Below are positions 28,548 to 60,772 of a stretch of DNA of 64,000 bases, one piece after another. Positions within the stretch are counted from its first letter, which is position 1. Every line of letters starts with the position of its first letter. The notes under the pieces are model-generated. The model was not told where the DNA came from. It saw only the letters and a program-made list of their open reading frames with translations, and searched no databases. The stretch is from the sequence record NC_041878.1, one strand, 5' to 3'. Position numbers and translations under genes: made by a program.

Positions 28548-28671
28548 CGGGAATTGGTGTAATGGCAGCACAACGTTATAACATAGATTCTTGTATATAG
28601 GAATTTCACAGCAACCAATACAATTGCATAGGGAGCCGTGAGATGAGGTTCGATTCCTTGATTCCCGACTA
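28548..28671 (+). ncRNA. tRNA-Pro-like (AGG loop) with 50-nt ACAGCAA insert in anticodon stem
   Basis: Acceptor CGGGAAT/ATTCCCG-A, D arm, T arm GGTTCGATTCC; insert 28576-28625. Confidence 0.6.
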
Positions 28672-42371: not shown

Positions 42372-42483
42372 GCATAAATGACGGAATTGGTAAACGTAGA
42401 GTCTGACAATAGCGAAAGCGACGATAGGACTTCGGGAGTAGCCGTGAGGTTCCCTTGTAGGTTCGAATCCTGCTTTATGCACC
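42372..42483 (+). ncRNA. class II tRNA-like RNA with anticodon loop replaced by ~22-nt insert
   Basis: GCATAAA/TTTATGC acceptor, D and T arms intact; GC-GAAA-GC in place of anticodon. Confidence 0.6.
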
Positions 42484-42850: not shown

Positions 42851-43255
42851 ATGAAAATGGATTTAGAATATCCGTACAACCAAGATTGGCAACGCGGATA
42901 CCTTGTGGTTAATCCAGAAGGAAGAAAAACAGTTATATTGTTTAATTCGGATAATGATAGAAGCTCTACTGCATATGCACGATATTTACTAGCAGTAAAA
43001 GAGGGTAGATATTTAACTGAAAATGAACAAGCTGATCATATAGATGCGGATAAAACTAATGATAGTATTGATAATCTGCAAATATTAACAATAGAACAGC
43101 ATAAAGAAAAAAGTTTATTTGAATCTCCTGGTAAAACGTATGTTGAATTTATATGCCAATATTGTGGGGAATCATTTAAAAGAGAAATTCGCCAAATTAA
43201 ACCATACACTAAGTATTGTAGTAGAAGATGTGGATGGGATAGTTTAAAAAAATAA
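42851..43255 (+). CDS. HNH homing endonuclease
   Basis: ADHIDADKTNDSIDNLQILT..H; C-terminal CQYC...YCSRRC. Confidence 0.85.
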   Translation: MKMDLEYPYNQDWQRGYLVVNPEGRKTVILFNSDNDRSSTAYARYLLAVKEGRYLTENEQADHIDADKTNDSIDNLQILTIEQHKEKSLFESPGKTYVEFICQYCGESFKREIRQIKPYTKYCSRRCGWDSLKK

Positions 43256-43266
43256 CTAAGAATTAT

Positions 43267-43437
43267 GCCGTGTACAGGTTCGATTCCTGTTCATTCACTG
43301 AGAGAAAGTACTCGAAAGGTGCACACAGTACAGTACGAGTATCAATAATGGTATTGTGATAGGGTGACAAGAAGATATTCTTGAGTGGTTGGTACTACGT
43401 TCATCTGAAATGGGTTCGAACCCCATTTGCGGCTCCT
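43267..43437 (+). ncRNA. RNA with two T-arm modules
   Basis: ACAGG-TTCGATT-CCTGT and ATGGG-TTCGAAC-CCCAT; ends GCCGTG/TGCGGC pair. Confidence 0.5.
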
Positions 43438-43455
43438 ATTAATTGAGGATTGAAT

Positions 43456-44671: not shown

Positions 44672-44756
44672 GCGTTTGTGGTGAAATTGGTAAACACAGG
44701 AGACTTAAAATCTCCCGCCTTTAGGTTTGTCGGTTCGAGTCCGACCAGACGCACCA
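44672..44756 (+). tRNA. tRNA-Leu(TAA), second copy
   Basis: GGAGA-CTTAAAA-TCTCC, CCA. Confidence 0.95.
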
Positions 44757-47722: not shown

Positions 47723-47836
47723 GCAGTGATCGTCTAGCGGCCCAGGACACGAAAAGCGATTCTTGATTAAGAATCTTACGGCATCTATAACTTTCATTTC
47801 ACGAACGTAACGTAGGTTCGAATCCTACTCACTGCT
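47723..47836 (+). tRNA. tRNA-Glu(TTC) with 41-nt insert between nt 28 and 29
   Basis: Glu-type D arm GTCTAGCGGCCCAGGAC; CG[insert 47752-47792]TTC-ATTTCAC-GAACG. Confidence 0.65.
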
Positions 47837-49423: not shown

Positions 49424-49548
49424 GGCGAGTTAGCTCAGTGGTAGAGCACGTATGAAACCCAGGATTCCTGTACTTGAATCCCGCAGCAACTATACTCTCA
49501 AGCCTTTTAAGCTCGTGGTCATTGGTTCGAATCCAATACTCGCCACCA
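49424..49548 (+). tRNA. tRNA-Lys(TTT) with 50-nt insert between nt 28 and 29
   Basis: Removing 49451-49500 leaves a 75-nt cloverleaf: CGAGC-CTTTTAA-GCTCG, ACCA. Confidence 0.75.
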
Positions 49549-53484: not shown

Positions 53485-53520
53485 AATTGAGATGTTTTTC
53501 AGTACTTTATGAAAAATAAA

Positions 53521-53549
53521 TGAAACGATAGAAATTTTTGTGGTATAAT
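53521..53549 (+). promoter_or_regulatory. class-B promoter
   Basis: TGAAAC-17-TATAAT before permuted tRNA mimic. Confidence 0.8.
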
Positions 53550-53566
53550 ATAGTACATAAGGCAAC

Positions 53567-53687
53567 GGAATCTTACAGCAAAAATAATTAATTTTTGATG
53601 AAAACAAAACGATGGCGGTTCGAATCCCCACCCACGATTTTGCCTTATTTTAAGTGGGAGCATGGTGCTGGATAAACAAGAGATTCC
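53567..53687 (+). ncRNA. circularly permuted tRNA mimic (ACAGCAA family)
   Basis: GGAATC-TTACAGCAA, T arm, CCCAC/GTGGG closed acceptor, D-like hairpin, GATTCC. Confidence 0.7.
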
Positions 53688-53709
53688 AGATTTTAATTTA
53701 GAAAATTTT

Positions 53710-53738
53710 TGAAACGAATCAAAAATTTGTGGTATAAT
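53710..53738 (+). promoter_or_regulatory. class-B promoter
   Basis: TGAAAC-17-TATAAT. Confidence 0.8.
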
Positions 53739-53755
53739 AAACGTATTAGCAACAC

Positions 53756-53873
53756 GAAATCTTACAGCAAACAATATCTTATATTTTTTATGCGAAAAAA
53801 ACGATGTGGTTCGAATCCACAACAACCATGTTGCTATGTTGGTTGTGCATGGGGCTAGAAAACAAAAGATTTC
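53756..53873 (+). ncRNA. circularly permuted tRNA mimic (ACAGCAA family)
   Basis: GAAATCTT-ACAGCAA; TGTGG-TTCGAAT-CCACA; ACAACC/GGTTGT; AAGATTTC. Confidence 0.75.
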
Positions 53874-53907
53874 AGTTTTTTTAATTAAGACAAATAGGAC
53901 AACGGCA

Positions 53908-54054
53908 ATGACCGCAGAAGAAAATTTAGAAATCCTTCGTAAAATTCTTGACGGAATTCGTGATGGCGATTTGAATGAAGTAATGTCCGAAATAGGTTTT
54001 GAAGTATCCAAAAGTACAGATAAAAGTACTGAATGGATAAACAAAAACCAATAA
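53908..54054 (+). CDS. small hypothetical protein
   Basis: SD AGGA; MTAEENLEIL. Confidence 0.6.
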   Translation: MTAEENLEILRKILDGIRDGDLNEVMSEIGFEVSKSTDKSTEWINKNQ

Positions 54055-54060
54055 CAATCA

Positions 54061-54133
54061 GTTCCCATCGTCTAGTGGTAGGACTTTTGACTTTCTATCA
54101 AAAAACCTCGGTTCGAATCCGGGTGGGAACGCA
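54061..54133 (+). tRNA. tRNA-Glu(TTC)
   Basis: TTTGA-CTTTCTA-TCAAA, T arm. Confidence 0.9.
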
Positions 54134-54142
54134 AAGATATTT

Positions 54143-54231
54143 GGGGGAATAGTCCGTAGTTGGTAGCGGGGCAGACTGTAAATCTGCTACACGAAAGTGT
54201 TCGGGTGGTTCGACTCCATCTTCCCTCACCA
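54143..54231 (+). tRNA. tRNA-Tyr(GTA)
   Basis: GCAGA-CTGTAAA-TCTGC, long variable arm, CCA. Confidence 0.95.
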
Positions 54232-54232
54232 A

Positions 54233-54338
54233 AAGAATCGCACAGCAAACATCAATCTTATATATTTCATTTGGCGAAAACACCTTCGGTTCGATTCCGA
54301 TTTACCACTGGATGTGGGGATAGAAAAACACGATTCTT
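54233..54338 (+). ncRNA. ACAGCAA family RNA with T arm and short closed acceptor
   Basis: AAGAATCG-CACAGCAA...TCGG-TTCGATT-CCGA...CGATTCTT. Confidence 0.65.
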
Positions 54339-54376
54339 GTTTCTAATTTAGCGTGAGTTAACAGAATTTAGCACAC

Positions 54377-54533
54377 GGATTCAGACAGCAAACATAAAAT
54401 CTTAAAAATCATATCATATAACGAGATTGTCTACTCGGACGTAAAACTCCCTTCGTAGTCACTTGGCAACTAGGGATATATAAATTAGTTGTATCGAACA
54501 GTGCTAAGGTTTTTGTTCGATTACATTGAATCC
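54377..54533 (+). ncRNA. ACAGCAA family RNA with inverted closing helix
   Basis: GGATTCA-GACAGCAA...TGAATCC. Confidence 0.55.
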
Positions 54534-54563
54534 AGTAATCAAAGTACTTCATTGTACTTTTAT

Positions 54564-54654
54564 GGAAGATTGGCAGAGCGGTTTAATGCACATGTCTTGA
54601 AAACATGCGGGGGTTAATAGCCCTCCCTGGGTTCGAATCCCAGGTCTTCCACCA
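54564..54654 (+). tRNA. tRNA-Ser(TGA)
   Basis: CATGT-CTTGAAA-ACATG, long variable arm, CCA. Confidence 0.95.
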
Positions 54655-54660
54655 AATTTT

Positions 54661-54781
54661 GGGAAAGTAGCTCAGTTGGTAGAGCACGTATAGACGATTC
54701 TTGTAGTTGAATCTTACAGCAACCATACAATTGCATATATGAAAGCACGGTGTCATTGGTTCGAATCCAGTCTTTCCCACA
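54661..54781 (+). ncRNA. tRNA (Phe-like body) with 43-nt ACAGCAA insert and 10-nt loop
   Basis: GGGAAAG/CTTTCCC, canonical D and T arms; CG[54689-54731]TGC-ATATATGAAA-GCACG. Confidence 0.65.
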
Positions 54782-54845
54782 TAGAATCTAACAGCAAACC
54801 TTATTTTATCAAACCTAACCTTTGAAGCGAAAATAATAGATTCTA
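54782..54845 (+). ncRNA. minimal ACAGCAA family RNA
   Basis: TAGAATCTA-ACAGCAA...TAGATTCTA. Confidence 0.6.
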
Positions 54846-54870
54846 GTACTTTTAATTTGAGAAATACATA

Positions 54871-55272
54871 TTGGAAAATGATGAAATTGAAAATATGTTA
54901 GTTGACGCATTGCGAAAAATCGACACTTCATCATATGATTTTAAATCTTCCAAAGAGATTTCGAATTCAGAATTCGGTTCTGACGGCAAACGGCGATACT
55001 TGAAACTCTACTTTCAAAAAAGTTCAGGTGAAGGTATTATAGAATTCATTTATCATTCGATAAAAGATACGCTACGATTCAGAATTCAATATATTGATAA
55101 CTCTGATGAAGATGAAGATTTTGATGGAACTAGCATATCGTATAAGATACCAAGAACTGAGGAACAATATTTTCAGTACGATACAATTCAGGACAACATG
55201 TTTAGTTTAGAATTCTATATTTTACTAGAAAAAACAATGTCAGAATTGACACTACTATGGTATAGTAGATGA
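54871..55272 (+). CDS. hypothetical protein, EExxFQxxT family
   Basis: TEEQYFQYDTIQD. Confidence 0.7.
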   Translation: MENDEIENMLVDALRKIDTSSYDFKSSKEISNSEFGSDGKRRYLKLYFQKSSGEGIIEFIYHSIKDTLRFRIQYIDNSDEDEDFDGTSISYKIPRTEEQYFQYDTIQDNMFSLEFYILLEKTMSELTLLWYSR

Positions 55273-55295
55273 TTTAATCACCACAAGGAAATGAA

Positions 55296-55505
55296 ATGTT
55301 TTACGATTATTATTATAAAGTAGATGGTGCACTTCGTCGTCATACTTCTGCGGAAGAACTAAATGATGAACAAGTAAGCAACATCTTCGGTGCACAAAAA
55401 CGTGTAGTACTTCTTGAGCCAGTAGTGTTTGAACGCGAAGTTCAGGAAGATGAAAAAACTAAAACTGTTAAAGAACATGTAGGGTTTATCGGTTACGTAG
55501 AATAA
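55296..55505 (+). CDS. hypothetical protein
   Basis: SD AAGGA. Confidence 0.7.
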   Translation: MFYDYYYKVDGALRRHTSAEELNDEQVSNIFGAQKRVVLLEPVVFEREVQEDEKTKTVKEHVGFIGYVE

Positions 55506-55532
55506 TAAATGTAACGTACTGATAAATAAAAT

Positions 55533-55577
55533 AGAATCCATCCAGCATTGACCGGAAAATAATATATTGGATTCTTG
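55533..55577 (+). ncRNA. minimal ACAGCAA family variant
   Basis: AGAATCCA-TCCAGCA...TGGATTCT-TG. Confidence 0.45.
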
Positions 55578-55600
55578 TATTAATTGAGATGAGATATATT

Positions 55601-55825
55601 ATGGATAATCAACACAAACAAATTAAAGGATACCGAGATTTATCTCAGAAAGAGATTAATCAAATGAATGCATTAAAAGATATTGCTAATAAAGTTGGCG
55701 ATATTATTGAAGCACTACAAGATGACCCTGACGTTGATCAACGATGGCTTGCAATTGCGAAGACTGACCTTCAAAAAGGTTTCATGTCAGCAGTTCGAAG
55801 CGTTGCTAAACCGGACTCGTTTTAA
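55601..55825 (+). CDS. acb2: anti-CBASS cyclic-nucleotide sponge, Acb2 family
   Basis: MDNQHKQIKGYRDLSQKEI..MN...RWLAIAKTDLQKGFM...AKPDSF matches Acb2/Vs.4 as recalled. Confidence 0.85.
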   Translation: MDNQHKQIKGYRDLSQKEINQMNALKDIANKVGDIIEALQDDPDVDQRWLAIAKTDLQKGFMSAVRSVAKPDSF

Positions 55826-56223
55826 TGGACAAATATGATCGTTTAGATTCAATAGGTGAAGAACACCTGTTGAGCTTGATGAAAGTACAAAATCCAAGAA
55901 CAATGATAGGATTATCTGACCAGATAGTGTTTAATGAAAATGATTCATTCTCACTTATTACTGGAGAGGTAATCCTTTTTCATTTGGATGATGGTAGTAA
56001 CACATTTAGTGTAATGATACTACCAAACAATACATTCAAAGTACTGTACTATGTAACAGATGATGAAGATGATGGTAACTACATATTCACTTTCAACAAT
56101 GTTCCATATGATATTACTGAAGAATGGCATTTTCAAAAGAGTACACAAAAACGTTTACCATTCACTTATGAATTTCATGAGAAGATGAAAGAATTCGTTG
56201 AGTACTGTTTGAAGTTAATTTAA
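55825..56223 (+). CDS. hypothetical protein, EExxFQxxT family
   Basis: TEEWHFQKSTQK. Confidence 0.7.
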   Translation: MDKYDRLDSIGEEHLLSLMKVQNPRTMIGLSDQIVFNENDSFSLITGEVILFHLDDGSNTFSVMILPNNTFKVLYYVTDDEDDGNYIFTFNNVPYDITEEWHFQKSTQKRLPFTYEFHEKMKEFVEYCLKLI

Positions 56224-56226
56224 CCT

Positions 56227-56300
56227 AGCGGGTTAGTATAGAGGCATTACACTCGACTGATAATCGAGCGAAGGCGGATCGTTACCGCCACCCGCTACCA
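56227..56300 (+). tRNA. tRNA-Ile(GAT), atypical T loop
   Basis: CTCGA-CTGATAA-TCGAG; GGCGG-ATCGTTA-CCGCC; CCA. Confidence 0.9.
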
Positions 56301-56310
56301 ACGAATTTTC

Positions 56311-56448
56311 GGAATCTAACAGCAATTAAAAATGTTAACTAAAAAATAGCTGCCGCAAGGCTTGTAGGTTCAAGTCCTACAAATTATGTCTTCATGAATA
56401 ATGATGGTGAAAATGGTAAACACGGCTATTAACTAAACAATGGATTCC
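56311..56448 (+). ncRNA. circularly permuted class II (Leu-like) tRNA mimic, ACAGCAA family
   Basis: GGAATC-TAACAGCAA; ATAGC; CC-GCAA-GG variable arm; TGTAGG-TTCAAGT-CCTACA; D arm GGTGAAAATGGTAAACAC; GCTAT; GGATTCC. Confidence 0.8.
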
Positions 56449-56464
56449 TGTATTAATTAAACCA

Positions 56465-56560
56465 CAAGAGCATACGTACATTGATTCAATAATCTATAGG
56501 CTTTGTACGATGGGTGGCAGATGGATTATCATCTGAAGATAGTTACGCTGCGGCTATCAA
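56465..56560 (+). ncRNA. candidate three-hairpin RNA
   Basis: CGTACA/TGTACG, CAGATG/CATCTG, GATAG/CTATC hairpins in tandem. Confidence 0.3.
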
Positions 56561-56567
56561 CAAAATT

Positions 56568-56712
56568 TGGAATTTGCCAGCAATTAACTTATTCAACGCT
56601 GCGGGTCGCAGGTTCGAGTCCTGCCAGATATGAAATGATGCTTCGTAAGATAAATCAGATTAGTACTGTAGCTCAGTTGGGAGAGCAGCAGCCCACACAA
56701 AGATGAATTCCA
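56568..56712 (+). ncRNA. circularly permuted tRNA mimic, ACAGCAA family
   Basis: TGGAATT-TGCCAGCAA; GCTGC; GCAGG-TTCGAGT-CCTGC; CAG/CTG; TAGCTCAGTTGGGAGAGC; GCAGC; GAATTCCA. Confidence 0.85.
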
Positions 56713-56725
56713 GTATTAATTAAGT

Positions 56726-56902
56726 AGGGCGGTTGTAACCAGTACTAGAATAATACTTAGGAGAGTAGTGACTCAATAGTACTAGTAGCTTTTCAGAAAT
56801 GAGAGCTTTCACGAGGCCAGCACAGTTAAGATCACAACTTAATTGTACACGTAGAGTTGGCAAAAAACGGATAAGTAGTCATTCACTGGTTAGGGTGGCC
56901 TT
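56726..56902 (+). ncRNA. candidate nested multi-helix RNA
   Basis: TAACCAGT/ACTGGTTA, GTGACT/AGTCAT, GCCAGC/GTTGGC, ACAGTTAAG/CTTAATTGT. Confidence 0.5.
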
Positions 56903-56959
56903 ATAAACTATTAATTGAGACATAAATATTCCTATACGTTTTTTAGTAAGGATATAATT

Positions 56960-57559
56960 ATGGAAATGAAAAAACTAATGGAAGATATTTCTGCCATTAT
57001 GGAAGGACAATTACCTGACTATTACTATCATGGTAGTTCTTCACCAATCACAAATTTCAGTGATGAGTTTGTTGGTAGAGGTAATGATGAATACGGTCCT
57101 GGTATATATTTTAGCTCCGTTCCTAGTACTGCAATTGGTTATGCCAAAGATGGTGCAAATGGTGTAGTATATCAGTGTCAGATAACTTTAAGAAAAGTAC
57201 TCTCAAAGAAACAAAAAATCAATAAAGCAGTACTTTTAAAGTTAATGCAAGCAACACCAGATGATGAAGCATATACTAATTGGGATGAAAACCCCAATAG
57301 AGCATATCAAAATGCATTGAATTCATATATTGATGCAGAAACTAATATGTATGATGCTTTGATGGATGTATGGTACGATTGGTATCGTTATCATGGTACT
57401 GAATTTGTACGTAATCTTGTTAAATTAGGTTATGATGGTTATATCTACGAATTTCCAAATGGAGAAAGATTTGTAGTAGTATATAATCCAGCAAGTATTA
57501 AAGTTGTAAATAGTTATTCTCCAGAAGAAGCTCTACAAACACTAGTTAAATCTAAATAA
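56960..57559 (+). CDS. ADP-ribosyltransferase-fold protein (ART-PolyVal-like)
   Basis: YHGS....F...GPGIYFS....AIGYA...LGYDGYI...VVYNP..IK. Confidence 0.6.
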   Translation: MEMKKLMEDISAIMEGQLPDYYYHGSSSPITNFSDEFVGRGNDEYGPGIYFSSVPSTAIGYAKDGANGVVYQCQITLRKVLSKKQKINKAVLLKLMQATPDDEAYTNWDENPNRAYQNALNSYIDAETNMYDALMDVWYDWYRYHGTEFVRNLVKLGYDGYIYEFPNGERFVVVYNPASIKVVNSYSPEEALQTLVKSK

Positions 57560-57593
57560 TTATAGTACTAACTATATTAGAAGGATTTTTAAA

Positions 57594-57947
57594 GTGTTTA
57601 AGACTAGATTAAAAGTTGAATTAATCAACAACGAAGGAAAGAAGTGGAAACTTATTGAAGATTTAGTTTACGAAGATGAAATGCATGGAAGAATTACTGT
57701 TCCTGCTGGATTTGAAACTGACTTTGCAAGTGTACCTAGAATACCAGTTGTGTTTGAATTGGTAGGGGATCGTGGTCATGCAGCAGCAACACTTCACGAT
57801 TGGTTGTATCATAATGATAATCTATCACGTAAAGAAGTTGATAAGATTCTACTTCAGGCTTTAAGAGATACGAATGTGGGTAAAGTTCGTTCATATTTGA
57901 TGTACTTTGGTGTACGTGGATTTGGATGGTTATTCTACATGAAATAA
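57594..57947 (+). CDS. DUF1353 family protein
   Basis: ITVPAGFETDFASVPR...AATLHDWLY. Confidence 0.85.
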   Translation: MFKTRLKVELINNEGKKWKLIEDLVYEDEMHGRITVPAGFETDFASVPRIPVVFELVGDRGHAAATLHDWLYHNDNLSRKEVDKILLQALRDTNVGKVRSYLMYFGVRGFGWLFYMK

Positions 57948-57952
57948 GAATT

Positions 57953-58210
57953 TGGAATTTAACAGCACAAAACATTTTGTCGCAGGTTCGAATCCTGCCA
58001 GAAATATTTAATTTGTAGATTACTTTATTATCATTTTCTAGATATTGATAATATTGAACATGTAACACCGTGGAGGTAACAGCTTTAGCGGGTTGTGAGA
58101 TAAACGCAGGGGTTACAATATATGTTGCAACGACCGATATGGCTAATCATAACAAATTAACTTAGTTCTGTAGCTTAGCTGGTAGAGCAAATGATAACGA
58201 ATAAATTCCA
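57953..58210 (+). ncRNA. circularly permuted tRNA mimic with 162-nt acceptor-stem insert
   Basis: TGGAATTT-AACAGCA; CATTT; GCAGG-TTCGAAT-CCTGC; CAGAA..TTCTG; TAGCTTAGCTGGTAGAGC; AAATG; AAATTCCA. Confidence 0.8.
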
Positions 58211-58245
58211 GTATTAATTAAACTAAAAAAAAAAGGTGCAATACA

Positions 58246-58680
58246 GTGGAACACGCTTTTAAAATTAACATCGGAGATTATTCTGATGATGGTCATGGTA
58301 AAAACGAAGTTATTATTGTTAAAAGTACTAAATCAGTACAAGATGTACTTAATGCGTTCATCAGTGCTGGTACTAAATTGAATGTAGTTCAACATGGTAG
58401 ATTTGTAATTGCTGAAGAATATGAAGATTCAAAGCTAAGTAATGAACATGCTGACTTCCTTCGTAATGCAGGTATCGAATTCGAAGATCTAGTTTATAAC
58501 GATGGTGACGAAGAAGAACCTGAATACATGATTAACGGCACTAATGAAATCATCCATTTAGTAATGCGTATTGCACAAACAGAATTAGACTTCGATTATC
58601 AAATTGCGAATGATACAATTCCATCATTCAATGGTTTTAGTGGAGCGGGTCCACAAATCGGATACGGTCTATTCTGGTAA
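58246..58680 (+). CDS. conserved phage hypothetical protein
   Basis: IGDYSDDGHGK...IGYGLF. Confidence 0.8.
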   Translation: MEHAFKINIGDYSDDGHGKNEVIIVKSTKSVQDVLNAFISAGTKLNVVQHGRFVIAEEYEDSKLSNEHADFLRNAGIEFEDLVYNDGDEEEPEYMINGTNEIIHLVMRIAQTELDFDYQIANDTIPSFNGFSGAGPQIGYGLFW

Positions 58681-58687
58681 TAAAATT

Positions 58688-58753
58688 TGGAATCTAGCAG
58701 CAACCATAAAATGAAATCAACTGTTAATTGAAAACCTCAAAAAATGGATTCCA
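58688..58753 (+). ncRNA. minimal ACAGCAA family RNA carrying Asn-type anticodon hairpin
   Basis: TGGAATC-TAGCAGCAA...TCAA-CTGTTAA-TTGA...GGATTCCA. Confidence 0.65.
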
Positions 58754-58760
58754 GCCTTTT

Positions 58761-59072
58761 ATGAATATAAAAGAAATTGTAGAACAAATTGAAAGTACTA
58801 TGAAAACTTCAGGTGATAATTACATGAAGGAGTTAATACTAACAAATAGGAAGAAATTACGTAACACATTCTGTGATGAATGTAATTCTTACTCCGTGTT
58901 CATGATAGTACATGATGAATTATGGAACATCATAAGTGACGGTAACTTAGATATTTTCTTATGTCCTAAATGTATGGAAAATCGATTAGGTAGAAAAATA
59001 GAAATTGCTGATTTAAAAATTTGTAATGTAAATTACCCTTACTTTTTAGCATTACAAATGATTGAAAAATAA
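58761..59072 (+). CDS. hypothetical protein with CxxC motifs
   Basis: CDEC...LCPKCMENRLGR. Confidence 0.65.
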   Translation: MNIKEIVEQIESTMKTSGDNYMKELILTNRKKLRNTFCDECNSYSVFMIVHDELWNIISDGNLDIFLCPKCMENRLGRKIEIADLKICNVNYPYFLALQMIEK

Positions 59073-59073
59073 A

Positions 59074-59102
59074 TGAAACGCCACAAGAAATTGTGGTATA
59101 AT
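59074..59102 (+). promoter_or_regulatory. class-B promoter
   Basis: TGAAAC-17-TATAAT before tRNA-Asn. Confidence 0.8.
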
Positions 59103-59122
59103 ATAAGTAAGAAAAACAACTT

Positions 59123-59196
59123 GACTGTATAGCTCAGAGGCAGAGCGGCTCCCTGTTAAGGAGAAGGTCGGGATTTCGAAATTCCCTACGGTCGCA
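59123..59196 (+). tRNA. tRNA-Asn(GTT)
   Basis: CTCC-CTGTTAA-GGAG; acceptor GACTGTA/TACGGTC. Confidence 0.9.
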
Positions 59197-59320
59197 AAGA
59201 ATCAAATTCACCAGGCGTACTATGGTGCAATACGGATAGCATGTTATTCTATAAGATTGGAATAGAATACGTATTAGAACCTTGTAAAGTTCTTCTGTAA
59301 ACTCAATTTGATACCTTCTT

Positions 59321-59387
59321 TAGAATCTAACAGCAAACACATTTAAACATATATTTTTGGGATATAAAACGTTAAAAACGGATTCTA
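59321..59387 (+). ncRNA. minimal ACAGCAA family RNA
   Basis: TAGAATC-TAACAGCAA...TATAT-TTTTGGG-ATATA...GATTCTA. Confidence 0.6.
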
Positions 59388-59417
59388 GTCTTATTAAAAG
59401 CAATCGAGAATATTTAC

Positions 59418-59648
59418 ATGAAAACGATCAAAATGTATTTGCTACAACGTCCAGGCCGCGATGATGATTATATCTCAGTACTAGATGATAAAATCAACGT
59501 TCAGTCAAGTCTATTAAAACATATGTGGAATGACCCAAGTAAGATCAATTTCAAAATTCTGACATTCCCTTATACATTAGAAACCTATTATGGTGATTCT
59601 AATGTTCTGGAAGATGCAGTACTATTATGGGAACATAATATAGATTAA
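59418..59648 (+). CDS. hypothetical protein
   Basis: Co-oriented ORF. Confidence 0.65.
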   Translation: MKTIKMYLLQRPGRDDDYISVLDDKINVQSSLLKHMWNDPSKINFKILTFPYTLETYYGDSNVLEDAVLLWEHNID

Positions 59649-59653
59649 AAATT

Positions 59654-59709
59654 TAGAATCTAACAGCAATTAAAACTCATTTGGATAATATGAAAACCGA
59701 TAGATTCTA
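59654..59709 (+). ncRNA. minimal ACAGCAA family RNA (near-identical to 60718-60772)
   Basis: TAGAATCTAACAGCAATTAAAACTCATTTGGATAATATGAAAA...TAGATTCTA. Confidence 0.65.
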
Positions 59710-59715
59710 GTCTTT

Positions 59716-59790
59716 AGGCGTATAGTGTAATTGGTTAGCACACCAGGTTTTGATCCTGGTAATCGAGGTTCAAGTCCTTGTATGCCTGCA
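59716..59790 (+). tRNA. tRNA-Gln(TTG)
   Basis: CCAGG-TTTTGAT-CCTGG; CGAGG-TTCAAGT-CCTTG. Confidence 0.9.
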
Positions 59791-59809
59791 AAATAAAATA
59801 AGGCAAATT

Positions 59810-60058
59810 ATGTTCGAACAAGAATACAGCAATTCAACTCCAGTACAAGATATGCTTGCATATTTTGTAACCGGTACAGTACGAATTAGCGATTATATGG
59901 TTGAAGAACCAAGAAGATATAATAAGTCACACATTGTTTATGCTCTTGATGAAAATGACGCAGAACGTAAGTTCATAGAACATTATGAAAAGAAAACTTC
60001 AGAGTATGAACGTTACTACAGTGTAAGTAATGTAGAAGTTTCAGAAACCTTAATTTAA
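59810..60058 (+). CDS. hypothetical protein
   Basis: Start moved past tRNA to MFEQE. Confidence 0.7.
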   Translation: MFEQEYSNSTPVQDMLAYFVTGTVRISDYMVEEPRRYNKSHIVYALDENDAERKFIEHYEKKTSEYERYYSVSNVEVSETLI

Positions 60059-60194
60059 AAAATTTCATTTCCTTGTGAAACAAGCTCGCATGATTCCCCT
60101 AGCTTGTAAAATTGTATGATGGGAACCGCGTTGCACCTGTACAGGTCAGATTGTAAAGATCAAGTATGTACAGTACTGAGAGCGGCAGTACACT

Positions 60195-60269
60195 GCATCC
60201 ATCGTATATCGGCTATTATAATTGGCTTCCACCCAATAGAACGGAGTTCGACCCTCCGTGGATGCTCGA
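60195..60269 (+). tRNA. tRNA-Gly(TCC)
   Basis: ATTGG-CTTCCAC-CCAAT; U73. Confidence 0.9.
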
Positions 60270-60383
60270 AGATTAACAAACAATAAGGTAAATTATATGC
60301 TATAGAATCCTAGTACTGGTCCTCCTGATAAGTTTAATTCAGAACAAACTACTAAATTAAACAATATCAAAAAGGAACATATT

Positions 60384-60710
60384 ATGTTAAACAAAGAACA
60401 ATACATTACTGTAAAAGCAACCTGGAAAAAAGTAAAAGAGCACACTGTACACGAACACATTATCTATAATGTACTTCGGGGTAAAGAGGCTGATGAAGGG
60501 TTTGTAGCTTTAACTGATTGGGGTCGTTTGAATGCAAGTGATAACAATCCGTGGTTCAACTATGATAACGCAGTACGCGAAATTCACTATCAGTTGAATG
60601 CTAAACGTTATAACTATGAAGGTACAGTAAAACATTATTCCGATGTTTTCGGCATTGATTTAACACCTGAACTAATTGCAGAAGTACTACAAGCAATTAA
60701 GTTCAAGTAA
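60384..60710 (+). CDS. conserved phage hypothetical protein
   Basis: SD AAGGA; HIIYNVLRGK. Confidence 0.75.
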   Translation: MLNKEQYITVKATWKKVKEHTVHEHIIYNVLRGKEADEGFVALTDWGRLNASDNNPWFNYDNAVREIHYQLNAKRYNYEGTVKHYSDVFGIDLTPELIAEVLQAIKFK

Positions 60711-60717
60711 CAGAATT

Positions 60718-60772
60718 TAGAATCTAACAGCAATTAAACTCATTTGGATAATATGAAAAACAATAGATTCTA
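60718..60772 (+). ncRNA. minimal ACAGCAA family RNA
   Basis: Direct repeat of 59654-59709. Confidence 0.65.

What the first reader, a model, noticed from the sequence alone, without database searches (positions are those of the whole stretch)
56311..56712. Back-to-back permuted tRNAs retaining class-specific parts (Leu-like variable arm; canonical D arm)
Seen: 56311 keeps a class II variable hairpin (CC-GCAA-GG) and a D arm nearly identical to that of the phage tRNA-Leu at 44672. 56568 keeps TAGCTCAGTTGGGAGAGC and GCAGG-TTCGAGT-CCTGC with the anticodon stem GCTGC/GCAGC split across the ends. Inference: the permuted RNAs arose repeatedly from different tRNA genes, implying a recurrent permutation route such as circularisation by an RNA ligase followed by reverse transcription or recombination.
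Basis: partly seen in the sequence, partly recalled or inferred. Interest (0 to 1): 0.72.

Follow-up and report, generated by a model that had tools for sequence, protein, structure and literature searches.

The report
Clamped, permuted tRNA-like phage RNAs
Two neighbouring stretches of a giant Pectobacterium phage genome encode tRNA bodies written in rearranged order and closed by a conserved helix, which look like stable tRNA mimics from an undescribed family of small phage RNAs rather than working tRNA genes.

Summary
The window is Pectobacterium phage CBB, a 378 kb Rak2-like jumbo phage. Both units, and a third at 57954-58221, carry a tRNA body in permuted order: anticodon-stem 3' strand, variable region, T arm, closed acceptor-like hairpin, D arm, anticodon-stem 5' strand.

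- **Origin.** U1 derives from a Leu(UAA)-like tRNA. U2 and U3 derive from a class I tRNA whose T arm matches the phage tRNA-Arg(ACG).
- **New finding: the clamp.** Each body sits inside a conserved clamp: helix rGAAUy/rAUUCy, a CAGCAA strand and an A-rich strand. This clamp occurs 13 times, all on the + strand, within 7.2 kb. Elsewhere it holds only a small hairpin, or closes as a hairpin inside four normal-order tRNA-like genes.
- **Selection.** Orthologues in six related phages keep every helix through compensatory changes.
- **Not decoders.** No anticodon loop is conserved, and the acceptor end is closed.
- **Closest known.** The topology is that of bacterial YrlA Y RNAs (Rfam hits of 31-45 bits, below the threshold of 69). 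The Ro-binding motif is absent, and no Ro60 gene was seen in the regions read.

Best reading: selected tRNA-mimic RNAs on a modular clamp scaffold whose partner is unknown. The proposed ligase plus reverse-transcriptase route has no support; recombination at clamp repeats is simpler. No expression data were found.

The parts
56311..56460 (+). U1: clamped, permuted Leu-like tRNA body (whole unit with its 3' tail)
   Evidence: R1 model 34.2 bits.
56311..56325 (+). U1 clamp 5' strand: GGAATC (56311-56316), TAA, CAGCAA (56320-56325)
   Evidence: The helix pairs with 56443-56448. Three of seven clamp pairs covary among orthologues.
56346..56350 (+). U1 anticodon-stem 3' strand ATAGC
   Evidence: Pairs with 56425-56429. 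The change UA to CG at one pair is compensated in 3 of 8 orthologues.
56352..56361 (+). U1 class II variable hairpin GCC-GCAA-GGC
   Evidence: GC changes to AU in 2 orthologues.
56364..56380 (+). U1 T arm
56381..56404 (+). U1 acceptor-like hairpin, closed by a loop (5 pairs here, 7-8 in orthologues)
56407..56423 (+). U1 D arm; with the two bases before it, 18 of 19 positions identical to tRNA-Leu(UAA) at 44672
56425..56448 (+). U1 anticodon-stem 5' strand GCTAT (56425-56429), A-rich linker, clamp 3' strand GATTCC (56443-56448)
56569..56723 (+). U2: clamped, permuted class I tRNA body. Clamp GGAATT 56569-56574 with AATTCC 56706-56711; CAGCAA 56578-56583; anticodon-stem strands 56598-56602 and 56688-56692; variable loop 56603-56607; T arm 56608-56624; acceptor-like region with a 38-nt insert 56625-56668; D arm 56671-56686.
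   Evidence: (YrlA 31.4 bits).
57954..58221 (+). U3: paralogue of U2 with about 170 nt inserted in the acceptor-like loop. T arm 57982-57998; D arm 58173-58188; stem CATTT 57973-57977 with AAATG 58189-58193.
   Evidence: R1 model 62.7 bits, E = 5e-13, and U3 was not in the training set. Orthologue of the compact GAP32 unit L002:2906-3024.
53567..53873 (+). Two clamp units (53567-53687, 53756-53873) holding a P2 hairpin, a T arm and an acceptor-like hairpin. Each follows a TGAAACG / TGGTATAAT promoter-like site. The 5' leader pairs with the acceptor-like loop.
54234..54533 (+). Clamp units 54234-54337 (T-arm type) and 54377-54533 (larger insert)
54783..54844 (+). Short clamp unit (small hairpin only)
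55533..55575 (+). Short clamp unit
58689..58752 (+). Short clamp unit
59322..59386 (+). Short clamp unit
59655..59708 (+). Short clamp unit, ending 7 nt before tRNA-Gln
60719..60771 (+). Short clamp unit
54661..54779 (+). Normal-order tRNA-like gene in which the clamp is closed as a hairpin in the anticodon region. Similar genes lie at 28548-28669, 47723-47836 and 49424-49545.
56227..56300 (+). tRNA-Ile(GAU), the conserved upstream neighbour of U1
56960..57559 (+). ADP-ribosyltransferase gene (ART-PolyVal family) lying between U2 and U3
   Evidence: E = 6e-13.

Best explanation
U1, U2 and U3 are genes for small structured RNAs of a phage-specific modular family.

Shown from the sequences:
- A conserved clamp closes each RNA. 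It is a 6-9 bp helix rGAAUy/rAUUCy. The 5' strand is followed by yAA-CAGCAA and a linker. The 3' strand is preceded by an A-rich linker.
- In these three units the clamp carries a complete tRNA core: anticodon stem, variable region, T arm, D arm, and the nucleotides of the elbow contacts.
- The clamp replaces the anticodon loop. The acceptor stem is closed into a hairpin.

Inferred:
- The units are transcribed on the + strand together with the surrounding tRNA and early genes.
- They fold into an L-shaped tRNA mimic held shut by the clamp.
- They act as stable non-decoding RNAs. The tRNA-like end would engage proteins that recognise tRNA shape, such as RNase P, modification enzymes or tRNA-directed defence or repair factors. 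The clamp would bind a factor that is still unknown.

This is the design of bacterial YrlA Y RNAs with a different closing module.

Inferred origin: capture of halves of the phage's own tRNA genes by duplication or recombination at the repeated clamp.
For: - Anatomy and folds.
- U1 orthologues (8 sequences): 91.4% of cells paired, 10 pairs with changes on both sides, slid controls 34-40%.
- U2 orthologues (8 sequences): 94% paired, 5 pairs with changes on both sides.
- U2 and U3 keep the anticodon stem with entirely different sequences, GCAGC/GCUGC against AAAUG/CAUUU.
- The order tRNA-Ile, U1, U2 is kept in Mimasvirus and Eneladusvirus phages.
- Rfam YrlA hits of 31-45 bits on the tRNA-like core in five phages.
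- 13 clamp units, all on the + strand, within 53567-60771. None in 83 kb of other CBB DNA. Shuffles give 0.66.
- 62 distinct units in Rak2-like contigs of IMG/VR.
- A model built on U2 orthologues finds U3, the U1 types and the short clamps, and every match in the window is on the + strand.
- Clamp and P2 helices covary among copies.
- The neighbourhood holds counter-defence genes: an Acb2/Tad1-like gene and an ADP-ribosyltransferase.
Against: - No expression or end-mapping data exist. Public runs held only contigs of relatives and unrelated tRNAs.
- The clamp's partner is unknown, and its motif matches nothing in Rfam.
- In CBB itself the acceptor-like stems of U2 and U3 are weakened by insertions (3-4 pairs), and the U2 fold is no better than shuffles (z = -0.3). 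The CBB copies may be less fit than their orthologues.
- Most sequence changes are shared by close relatives, so the number of independent compensatory events is small.
Confidence: 0.5

Rival explanations
1. Cis-acting punctuation. The clamp units, with or without a tRNA-like insert, are processing and stabilising elements of polycistronic tRNA and early transcripts. The closed structures insulate neighbouring genes. AU-rich flanks are cut by host RNases. tRNA-like inserts attract RNase P. The products have no function in trans.
For: - Units lie in nearly every spacer of a 7-kb stretch, directly after tRNA 3' ends and directly before tRNAs or ribosome-binding regions.
- They are strand-specific.
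- Orthologues have 7-8 bp acceptor-like stems stacked on a T arm, the main RNase P determinant.
- M. smegmatis YrlA, which has such a stem, is cut by RNase P RNA (PMC4201824).
- The acceptor-like loop tolerates inserts of 38 and about 170 nt.
Against: - A processing site does not need a full D arm, a variable hairpin and the elbow nucleotides, yet these are conserved across genera.
- Two units have their own promoter-like sites.
- The clamp helix sequence itself is conserved, which points to sequence-specific recognition.
Confidence: 0.2
2. Recombination debris. The units are chimeric pseudo-tRNAs, by-products of recombination among repeated clamp elements and tRNA genes, and have no function of their own.
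For: - Relatives differ by insertions and deletions whose ends lie at clamp motifs.
- The ADP-ribosyltransferase cassette is present or absent between units.
- CBB U2 and U3 carry insertions and weakened acceptor-like stems.
- GAP32 unit L002:1757-1858 has a truncated D arm.
Against: - Compensatory changes occur in every helix.
- Synteny is conserved across two genera.
- U3 still scores 62.7 bits despite its insert.
Confidence: 0.1
3. True permuted tRNA genes. The clamp is cut on both strands and the ends are joined by the phage Pnkp and Rnl1. This gives a circular intermediate with a closed anticodon loop. The circle is then opened at the acceptor by RNase P and 3' processing, as in the red alga Cyanidioschyzon merolae.
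For: - The phage encodes T4-type RNA ligase 1 and polynucleotide kinase-phosphatase.
- Re-permuted units are called intron-containing tRNAs by ARAGORN in 8 of 12 cases.
- The same clamp occurs closed inside normal-order tRNA-like genes.
- The acceptor-like loop tolerates long inserts.
Against: - No anticodon loop is conserved. The called anticodons differ among orthologues (aaa, taa, ata, aac).
- Acceptor-like loops of 2-4 nt leave no discriminator base or CCA.
- Most U2 orthologues keep a C-A mismatch in the anticodon stem.
- No splicing endonuclease is known in these phages or their hosts.
- CBB has ordinary Leu and Arg tRNAs.
Confidence: 0.07
4. The clamp is a new self-cleaving ribozyme, and the tRNA-like bodies occupy a variable stem.
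For: - Conserved unpaired nucleotides (CAGCAA, the A-rich strand) flank a conserved helix.
- There are many copies per genome, in spacers next to tRNAs. Hammerhead and HDV-like ribozymes occur in such places in other phages (my own knowledge).
Against: - No Rfam ribozyme family matches, even at E = 10.
- My attempt to fit an HDV-like double pseudoknot failed, because the second pairing is not conserved.
- No cleavage data exist.
Confidence: 0.05
5. Genuine YrlA Y RNAs that bind a Ro60/Rsr protein.
For: - Same domain order.
- Sub-threshold YrlA hits in five phages, one of them aligned end to end.
- Some jumbo phages encode TROVE proteins (PMC7824862).
Against: - Scores of 31-45 bits against a gathering score of 69.
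- The closing stem does not align, and the GNCGAAN0-1G motif is absent.
- No TROVE/Ro60 gene in the annotated regions I read or in the genome paper.
Confidence: 0.04

Closest known systems
YrlA bacterial Y RNAs (Rfam RF02553; Chen et al. 2014, PMC4201824)
   Same: - A closing stem made by the 5' and 3' ends.
- Inside it, a tRNA-like domain in the order variable region, T arm, closed acceptor-like stem-loop, D arm.
- The elbow nucleotides are kept.
- Found in phages as well as bacteria.
- The Rfam model hits the core at 31-45 bits.
   Different: - Below the gathering score.
- The closing module is a different, AU-rich clamp carrying CAGCAA, without the Ro-binding GNCGAAN0-1G motif.
- No Ro60 gene nearby.
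- The same clamp is also used without any tRNA part, 13 times in 7 kb.
Circularly permuted tRNA genes of Cyanidioschyzon merolae and some other algae
   Same: - The 3' half lies upstream of the 5' half.
- An intervening piece sits where the acceptor ends would be.
- A helix is formed by the transcript ends at the anticodon side.
   Different: - Those genes mature into ordinary decoding tRNAs through a bulge-helix-bulge motif, a splicing endonuclease and a ligase.
- Here there is no conserved anticodon loop, no bulge-helix-bulge motif, and no discriminator or CCA.
- The host is a bacterium.
Two-piece tmRNA from permuted ssrA genes
   Same: A permuted tRNA-like domain, with the T arm before the acceptor 5' strand, in bacteria.
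   Different: - No tag reading frame.
- No G-U identity pair in the acceptor stem.
- A full D arm is present.
- ARAGORN finds no tmRNA.
PeSL cassettes of T4-type phages (promoter-early stem-loops; Arbiol et al. 2010, from my own knowledge)
   Same: - Short repeated intergenic structured cassettes in the plastic, small-gene region of a T4-related genome.
- They coincide with insertion and deletion breakpoints between relatives.
   Different: - PeSLs are a promoter plus a terminator hairpin.
- The clamp has no consistent promoter and tolerates 100-250 nt inserts.
- Its helices covary like an RNA.

Membership tests
YrlA (Y RNA-like, RF02553) | Covariance-model score at or above Rfam's gathering score (69 bits) | tested here: not met
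   31.4 bits for CBB U2. 36.2-44.7 bits for orthologues.
YrlA (Y RNA-like, RF02553) | tRNA-like domain in the order V, T arm, acceptor-like stem-loop, D arm, inside a terminal stem | tested here: met
   Helices supported by covariation.
YrlA (Y RNA-like, RF02553) | Ro60-binding helix with the GNCGAAN0-1G motif (PMC4201824) | tested here: not met
   The terminal stem aligns with non-standard pairs, and the motif is absent. The clamp sequence is rGAAUy ... CAGCAA.
YrlA (Y RNA-like, RF02553) | Encoded next to a Ro60/Rsr (TROVE) gene | tested here: inconclusive
   None among the annotated genes of CBB 1-50000, 300500-309300 and 312000-345000, and none mentioned in the genome paper. About 60% of the genome annotation was not read. 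The host was not checked.
Permuted tRNA gene | 3' half upstream of 5' half, with complementary acceptor strands | tested here: met
   Acceptor-like stems have 7-8 bp in orthologues and 3-5 bp in CBB.
Permuted tRNA gene | After re-joining, a canonical 7-nt anticodon loop with a conserved anticodon | tested here: not met
   ARAGORN anticodon calls differ among orthologues, and the linkers are not conserved as a loop.
Permuted tRNA gene | Bulge-helix-bulge motif at the transcript ends, plus a splicing endonuclease | tested here: not met
   The clamp is a 6-9 bp helix with long asymmetric linkers, not 3-4-3. No endonuclease was identified. The enzyme side is not testable here.
Permuted tRNA gene | Circular RNA intermediate | not testable with these tools
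   No RNA reads of this phage are available.
tmRNA (including two-piece) | tRNA-Ala-like acceptor and a tag reading frame | tested here: not met
   ARAGORN reports no tmRNA. Only the T arm gives weak tmRNA hits of 6-10 bits. Reading frames after CAGCAA are not conserved (sequences).
Canonical tRNA (RF00005) | Contiguous cloverleaf scoring at least 29 bits | tested here: not met
   No tRNA hit on U1, U2 or U3 at the gathering or E-value thresholds.

The most novel reading that the evidence does not exclude
The clamp is the recognition element of a phage RNA cut-and-join system: an unidentified endonuclease working with the phage's Pnkp and Rnl1. Open-clamp (permuted) and closed-clamp (normal-order) genes would then mature into the same spliced or circular tRNA-like product. 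That would be protein-dependent tRNA-type splicing or circularisation in a bacterial virus, and it would explain why gene permutation is tolerated repeatedly.
Probability: 0.08. Interest if true: 0.9.

Novelty: new variant of a known kind. Interest (0 to 1): 0.62.

Why it matters
Jumbo phages carry large tRNA sets, and tRNAs are a main battleground between phages and bacterial defences.

- **A new class of phage tRNA mimics.** A conserved family of non-decoding, tRNA-shaped RNAs sits among counter-defence genes (an Acb2/Tad1-like sponge and an ADP-ribosyltransferase). It would give Y-RNA-like tRNA mimicry a second, independent instance with a different protein-binding end.
- **An unannotated RNA motif.** The clamp is repeated, strand-specific and modular. 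At least 62 distinct copies occur in Rak2-like phages, and neither Rfam nor the genome papers I read describe it. It can carry nothing, a T arm, or a whole tRNA body.
- **Natural permutations.** It offers a set of natural circular permutations of one RNA fold.
- **Annotation.** About 660 bp of CBB (window 56299-56959) has no annotated feature, and four normal-order tRNA-like genes have their anticodon region occupied by the clamp; the one whose annotation I read (54661-54779) is labelled tRNA-Ser(AGA).

Tried and rejected
- **Rfam.** I scanned at the gathering threshold and at E = 1-10. Apart from tRNA and sub-threshold YrlA, only low-scoring matches appeared, taken as chance. No ribozyme, riboswitch or tmRNA family explains the clamp.
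- **HDV-like double pseudoknot.** CAGCAAUUAA could pair with the UUAAUU tail, but this pairing is not conserved in other copies.
- **Bulge-helix-bulge reading.** The strand order of the bulges fits, but the helix length and the long A-rich linker do not.
- **tmRNA-like tag.** Reading frames starting at the GCA of CAGCAA are not conserved (sequences).
- **K-turn, loop E, CsrA (GGA loops) and Hfq (ARN repeats).** Each fits some copies but not all. None was tested.
- **Short units as promoters.** CTAACA-N17-GATAAT does occur. A promoter, however, would not tolerate 100-250 nt inserts or show helix covariation.
- **Intron models for the four long tRNA-like genes.** ARAGORN gives arbitrary, mutually inconsistent introns and anticodons.
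- **RNA evidence.** Two run searches and one read-laying gave only contigs of related phages and unrelated cellular tRNAs. Nothing bears on transcript ends or joints of this phage.
- **Bacterial genomes.** A scan with the clamp 5' pattern gave single matches at about the number I estimate from the pattern's degeneracy and the 596 Gb scanned, with no clamp-like unit.
- **Literature.** Searches found no description of these elements.

Full report
**Identity of the window.**
The window is 100% identical to Pectobacterium phage vB_PcaM_CBB (NC_041878; record position = window position + 248000). CBB is a 378 kb Rak2-like jumbo myovirus of the genus Mimasvirus. The window covers most of the phage's tRNA region. 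ARAGORN finds 21 tRNAs. Rfam finds these and four longer tRNA-like genes. In GenBank the stretch 56299-56959, which contains the finding, carries no annotation.

U1 (56311-56460) reads, in order:
- anticodon-stem 3' strand ATAGC;
- a class II variable hairpin GCC-GCAA-GGC;
- a T arm;
- a closed acceptor-like hairpin;
- a D arm;
- anticodon-stem 5' strand GCTAT.

The U1 D arm, taken with the two bases before it, matches the phage tRNA-Leu(UAA) at 44672 in 18 of 19 positions. In U2, the variable loop, T arm and next two bases (24 nt) are identical to the phage tRNA-Arg(ACG) at 62642. So the two bodies do come from different tRNA types.

Re-permuting twelve units from five phages in silico, ARAGORN calls eight of them tRNAs with an "intron" of 28-47 nt.

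Both units are closed by the same module. The 5' strand is rGAATy, then two to four bases, then CAGCAA and a linker. The 3' strand is an A-rich linker, then rATTCy, then usually (A/T)GTAyT and an AT-rich tail.

The helix covaries among copies: GGAATC/GATTCC, AGAATC/GATTCT, GGAATT/AATTCC, GAAATC/GATTTC, GGATTC/GAATCC.

A simple search finds 13 such units in the window. All are on the + strand, and all lie between 53567 and 60771. It finds none in 83 kb of other CBB DNA. Shuffled sequence gives 0.66.

The clamp holds different contents:
- a whole tRNA body in U1, U2 and a third unit, U3, at 57954-58221;
- a small hairpin plus a T arm and an acceptor-like hairpin at 53567, 53756 and 54234;
- only a small hairpin whose stem covaries (TCAT/ATGA, TTCT/AGAA, TTTTT/AAAAA) at 54783, 59655, 60719 and, in related phages, elsewhere.

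In four normal-order tRNA-like genes the same clamp is closed as a hairpin in the anticodon region: 28548-28669, 47723-47836, 49424-49545 and 54661-54779. The motif order there is 3' strand, loop, 5' strand, CAGCAA. The permuted units and these genes are therefore circular permutations of one another.

**Conservation.**
Related phages have U1 directly downstream of tRNA-Ile, and a U2-type unit further on: GAP32, Kaldavass, XbC2, fHe-Yen9-04 and Serratia BF, plus several 350-371 kb IMG/VR contigs.

The orthologues are more compact than the CBB copies. Their acceptor-like stems have 7-8 pairs closed by two to four bases. CBB U2 has a 38-nt insert at that point, and U3 about 170 nt.

On the eight U1 sequences:
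- 91.4% of cells pair;
- ten pairs change on both sides;
- slid controls pair at 34-40%.

On the eight U2 sequences:
- 94% of cells pair;
- five pairs change on both sides.

U2 and U3 keep the anticodon stem with unrelated sequences. A covariance model built on the U2 alignment behaves as follows:
- it finds U3, which was not used in training, at 62.7 bits;
- it finds the U1 types at 31-81 bits;
- it finds the short clamps at about 20-39 bits;
- every match in the window is on the + strand, and there is none in the other CBB DNA searched.

The structures are therefore under selection as RNA. The independent events are few, because several phages are close relatives.

**They are not decoding tRNAs.**
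- The clamp and its linkers occupy the place of the anticodon loop.
- The linkers are not conserved as a 7-nt loop.
- ARAGORN's anticodon calls differ among orthologues (aaa, taa, ata, aac).
- The acceptor end is closed, and its loop leaves no room for a discriminator base or CCA.
- Rfam's tRNA model does not hit the units.

**Comparison with known families.**
The closest known architecture is YrlA, the tRNA-mimicking Y RNA of bacteria and some phages. Rfam's YrlA model hits the core of CBB U2 at 31.4 bits. It hits the orthologues at 36-45 bits, one of them end to end. These scores are below the gathering score of 69.

Other defining features of YrlA are missing:
- The terminal stem aligns only through non-standard pairs.
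- The Ro-binding motif GNCGAAN0-1G (PMC4201824) is absent.
- No TROVE gene appears in the annotation I read or in the genome paper.

So the units work like a YrlA in design, but they are not members of that family.

Permuted tRNA genes of red algae share the gene order. They differ in requiring a bulge-helix-bulge motif and in producing a real tRNA.

Two-piece tmRNA is excluded.

**Mechanism and origin.**
The phage encodes T4-type RNA ligase 1 and polynucleotide kinase-phosphatase. A cut-and-join pathway is therefore enzymatically conceivable. Nothing in the sequences requires it, and no endonuclease or reverse transcriptase was seen.

A DNA-level origin is simpler. Tandem duplication of a closed-clamp gene, or recombination between clamp copies, yields the permuted form. 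Two observations fit this:
- Contigs of relatives in public runs break at clamp motifs.
- The gene pair between U2 and U3, an ART-PolyVal ADP-ribosyltransferase and a DUF1353 protein, is flanked by clamp RNAs in CBB and GAP32. In BF the first of the pair is flanked in the same way. The cassette is missing in Yen9-04, Kaldavass and XbC2.

Function is inferred only. The best reading is a stable tRNA-shaped RNA whose clamp binds an unknown partner. The neighbourhood also holds an Acb2/Tad1-like gene at 55601-55825. The main rival is that the units are cis-acting processing or stabilising punctuation in the polycistronic transcripts.

**Limits.**
- No transcript data exist for this phage in the runs that were reachable.
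- About 60% of the CBB annotation was not read.
- The clamp's partner and chemistry are unknown.
- The literature searches found no description of these elements. This does not prove that none exists.

Noticed in passing
window 1-64000 (whole window): The palindrome AGTACT occurs 207 times, against 17 expected from dinucleotide shuffles: about one per 310 bp, in genes and spacers alike. It also forms the acceptor-like stems of the U2 orthologues and often follows the clamp 3' strand. It is probably a DNA-level signal of unknown kind.
   Followed up: no
window 53554-53562 with 53640-53648; 53744-53751 with 53829-53836; L022:5196-5322: In the T-arm-type clamp units, the 5' leader just upstream of the clamp is complementary to the loop of the acceptor-like hairpin over 8-9 nt. 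The pairing sequences differ in three versions (CBB unit 1; CBB unit 2 and GAP32; Serratia BF). This looks like a conserved long-range pairing.
   Followed up: partly
window 49424-49545 and L022:895-1020: This long tRNA-like gene keeps a CUUUUAA loop, the anticodon loop of tRNA-Lys(UUU), on a short stem that changes compensatorily between CBB and BF. The clamp hairpin is inserted between the D arm and this arm. It may be a Lys tRNA with an extra arm or an unusual intron. CBB also has an ordinary tRNA-Lys(UUU) at record position 313823.
   Followed up: partly
window 55601-55825 and 56960-57559: The small ORF at 55601 matches the Acb2/Tad1 hairpin domain (anti-CBASS and anti-Thoeris sponges; E = 1e-19). 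The ORF at 56960 is an ART-PolyVal ADP-ribosyltransferase (E = 6e-13). Both are annotated as hypothetical in GenBank.
   Followed up: partly
window 43250-43450: Two orphan T-arm-like hairpins (43274 and 43410) lie about 120 nt apart, with no tRNA call and no clamp. The second is followed by the TATTAATTGAGGA tail seen after other RNA genes. This may be another unannotated structured RNA.
   Followed up: no
window 42372-42481: A 110-nt tRNA-like gene (Rfam tRNA, 37 bits) lies directly after tRNA-Leu(UAA). It has extra sequence in the anticodon and variable region but no clamp motif.
   Followed up: no
window 53520-53549, 53709-53738, 59073-59102: Three strong promoter-like sites share (A/T)TGAAA, an 18-nt spacer and TG-n-TATAAT. 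This is the divergent RpoD-like type (-35 element TGAAACG) described in the CBB paper. Two drive clamp units and one drives tRNA-Asn.
   Followed up: partly
window 56461-56567 and 56724-56959: The spacer between U1 and U2 and the 236 nt between U2 and the ADP-ribosyltransferase gene are unannotated. They hold no convincing ORF and remain unexplained. Contigs from public runs match 56713-57088 almost exactly.
   Followed up: no
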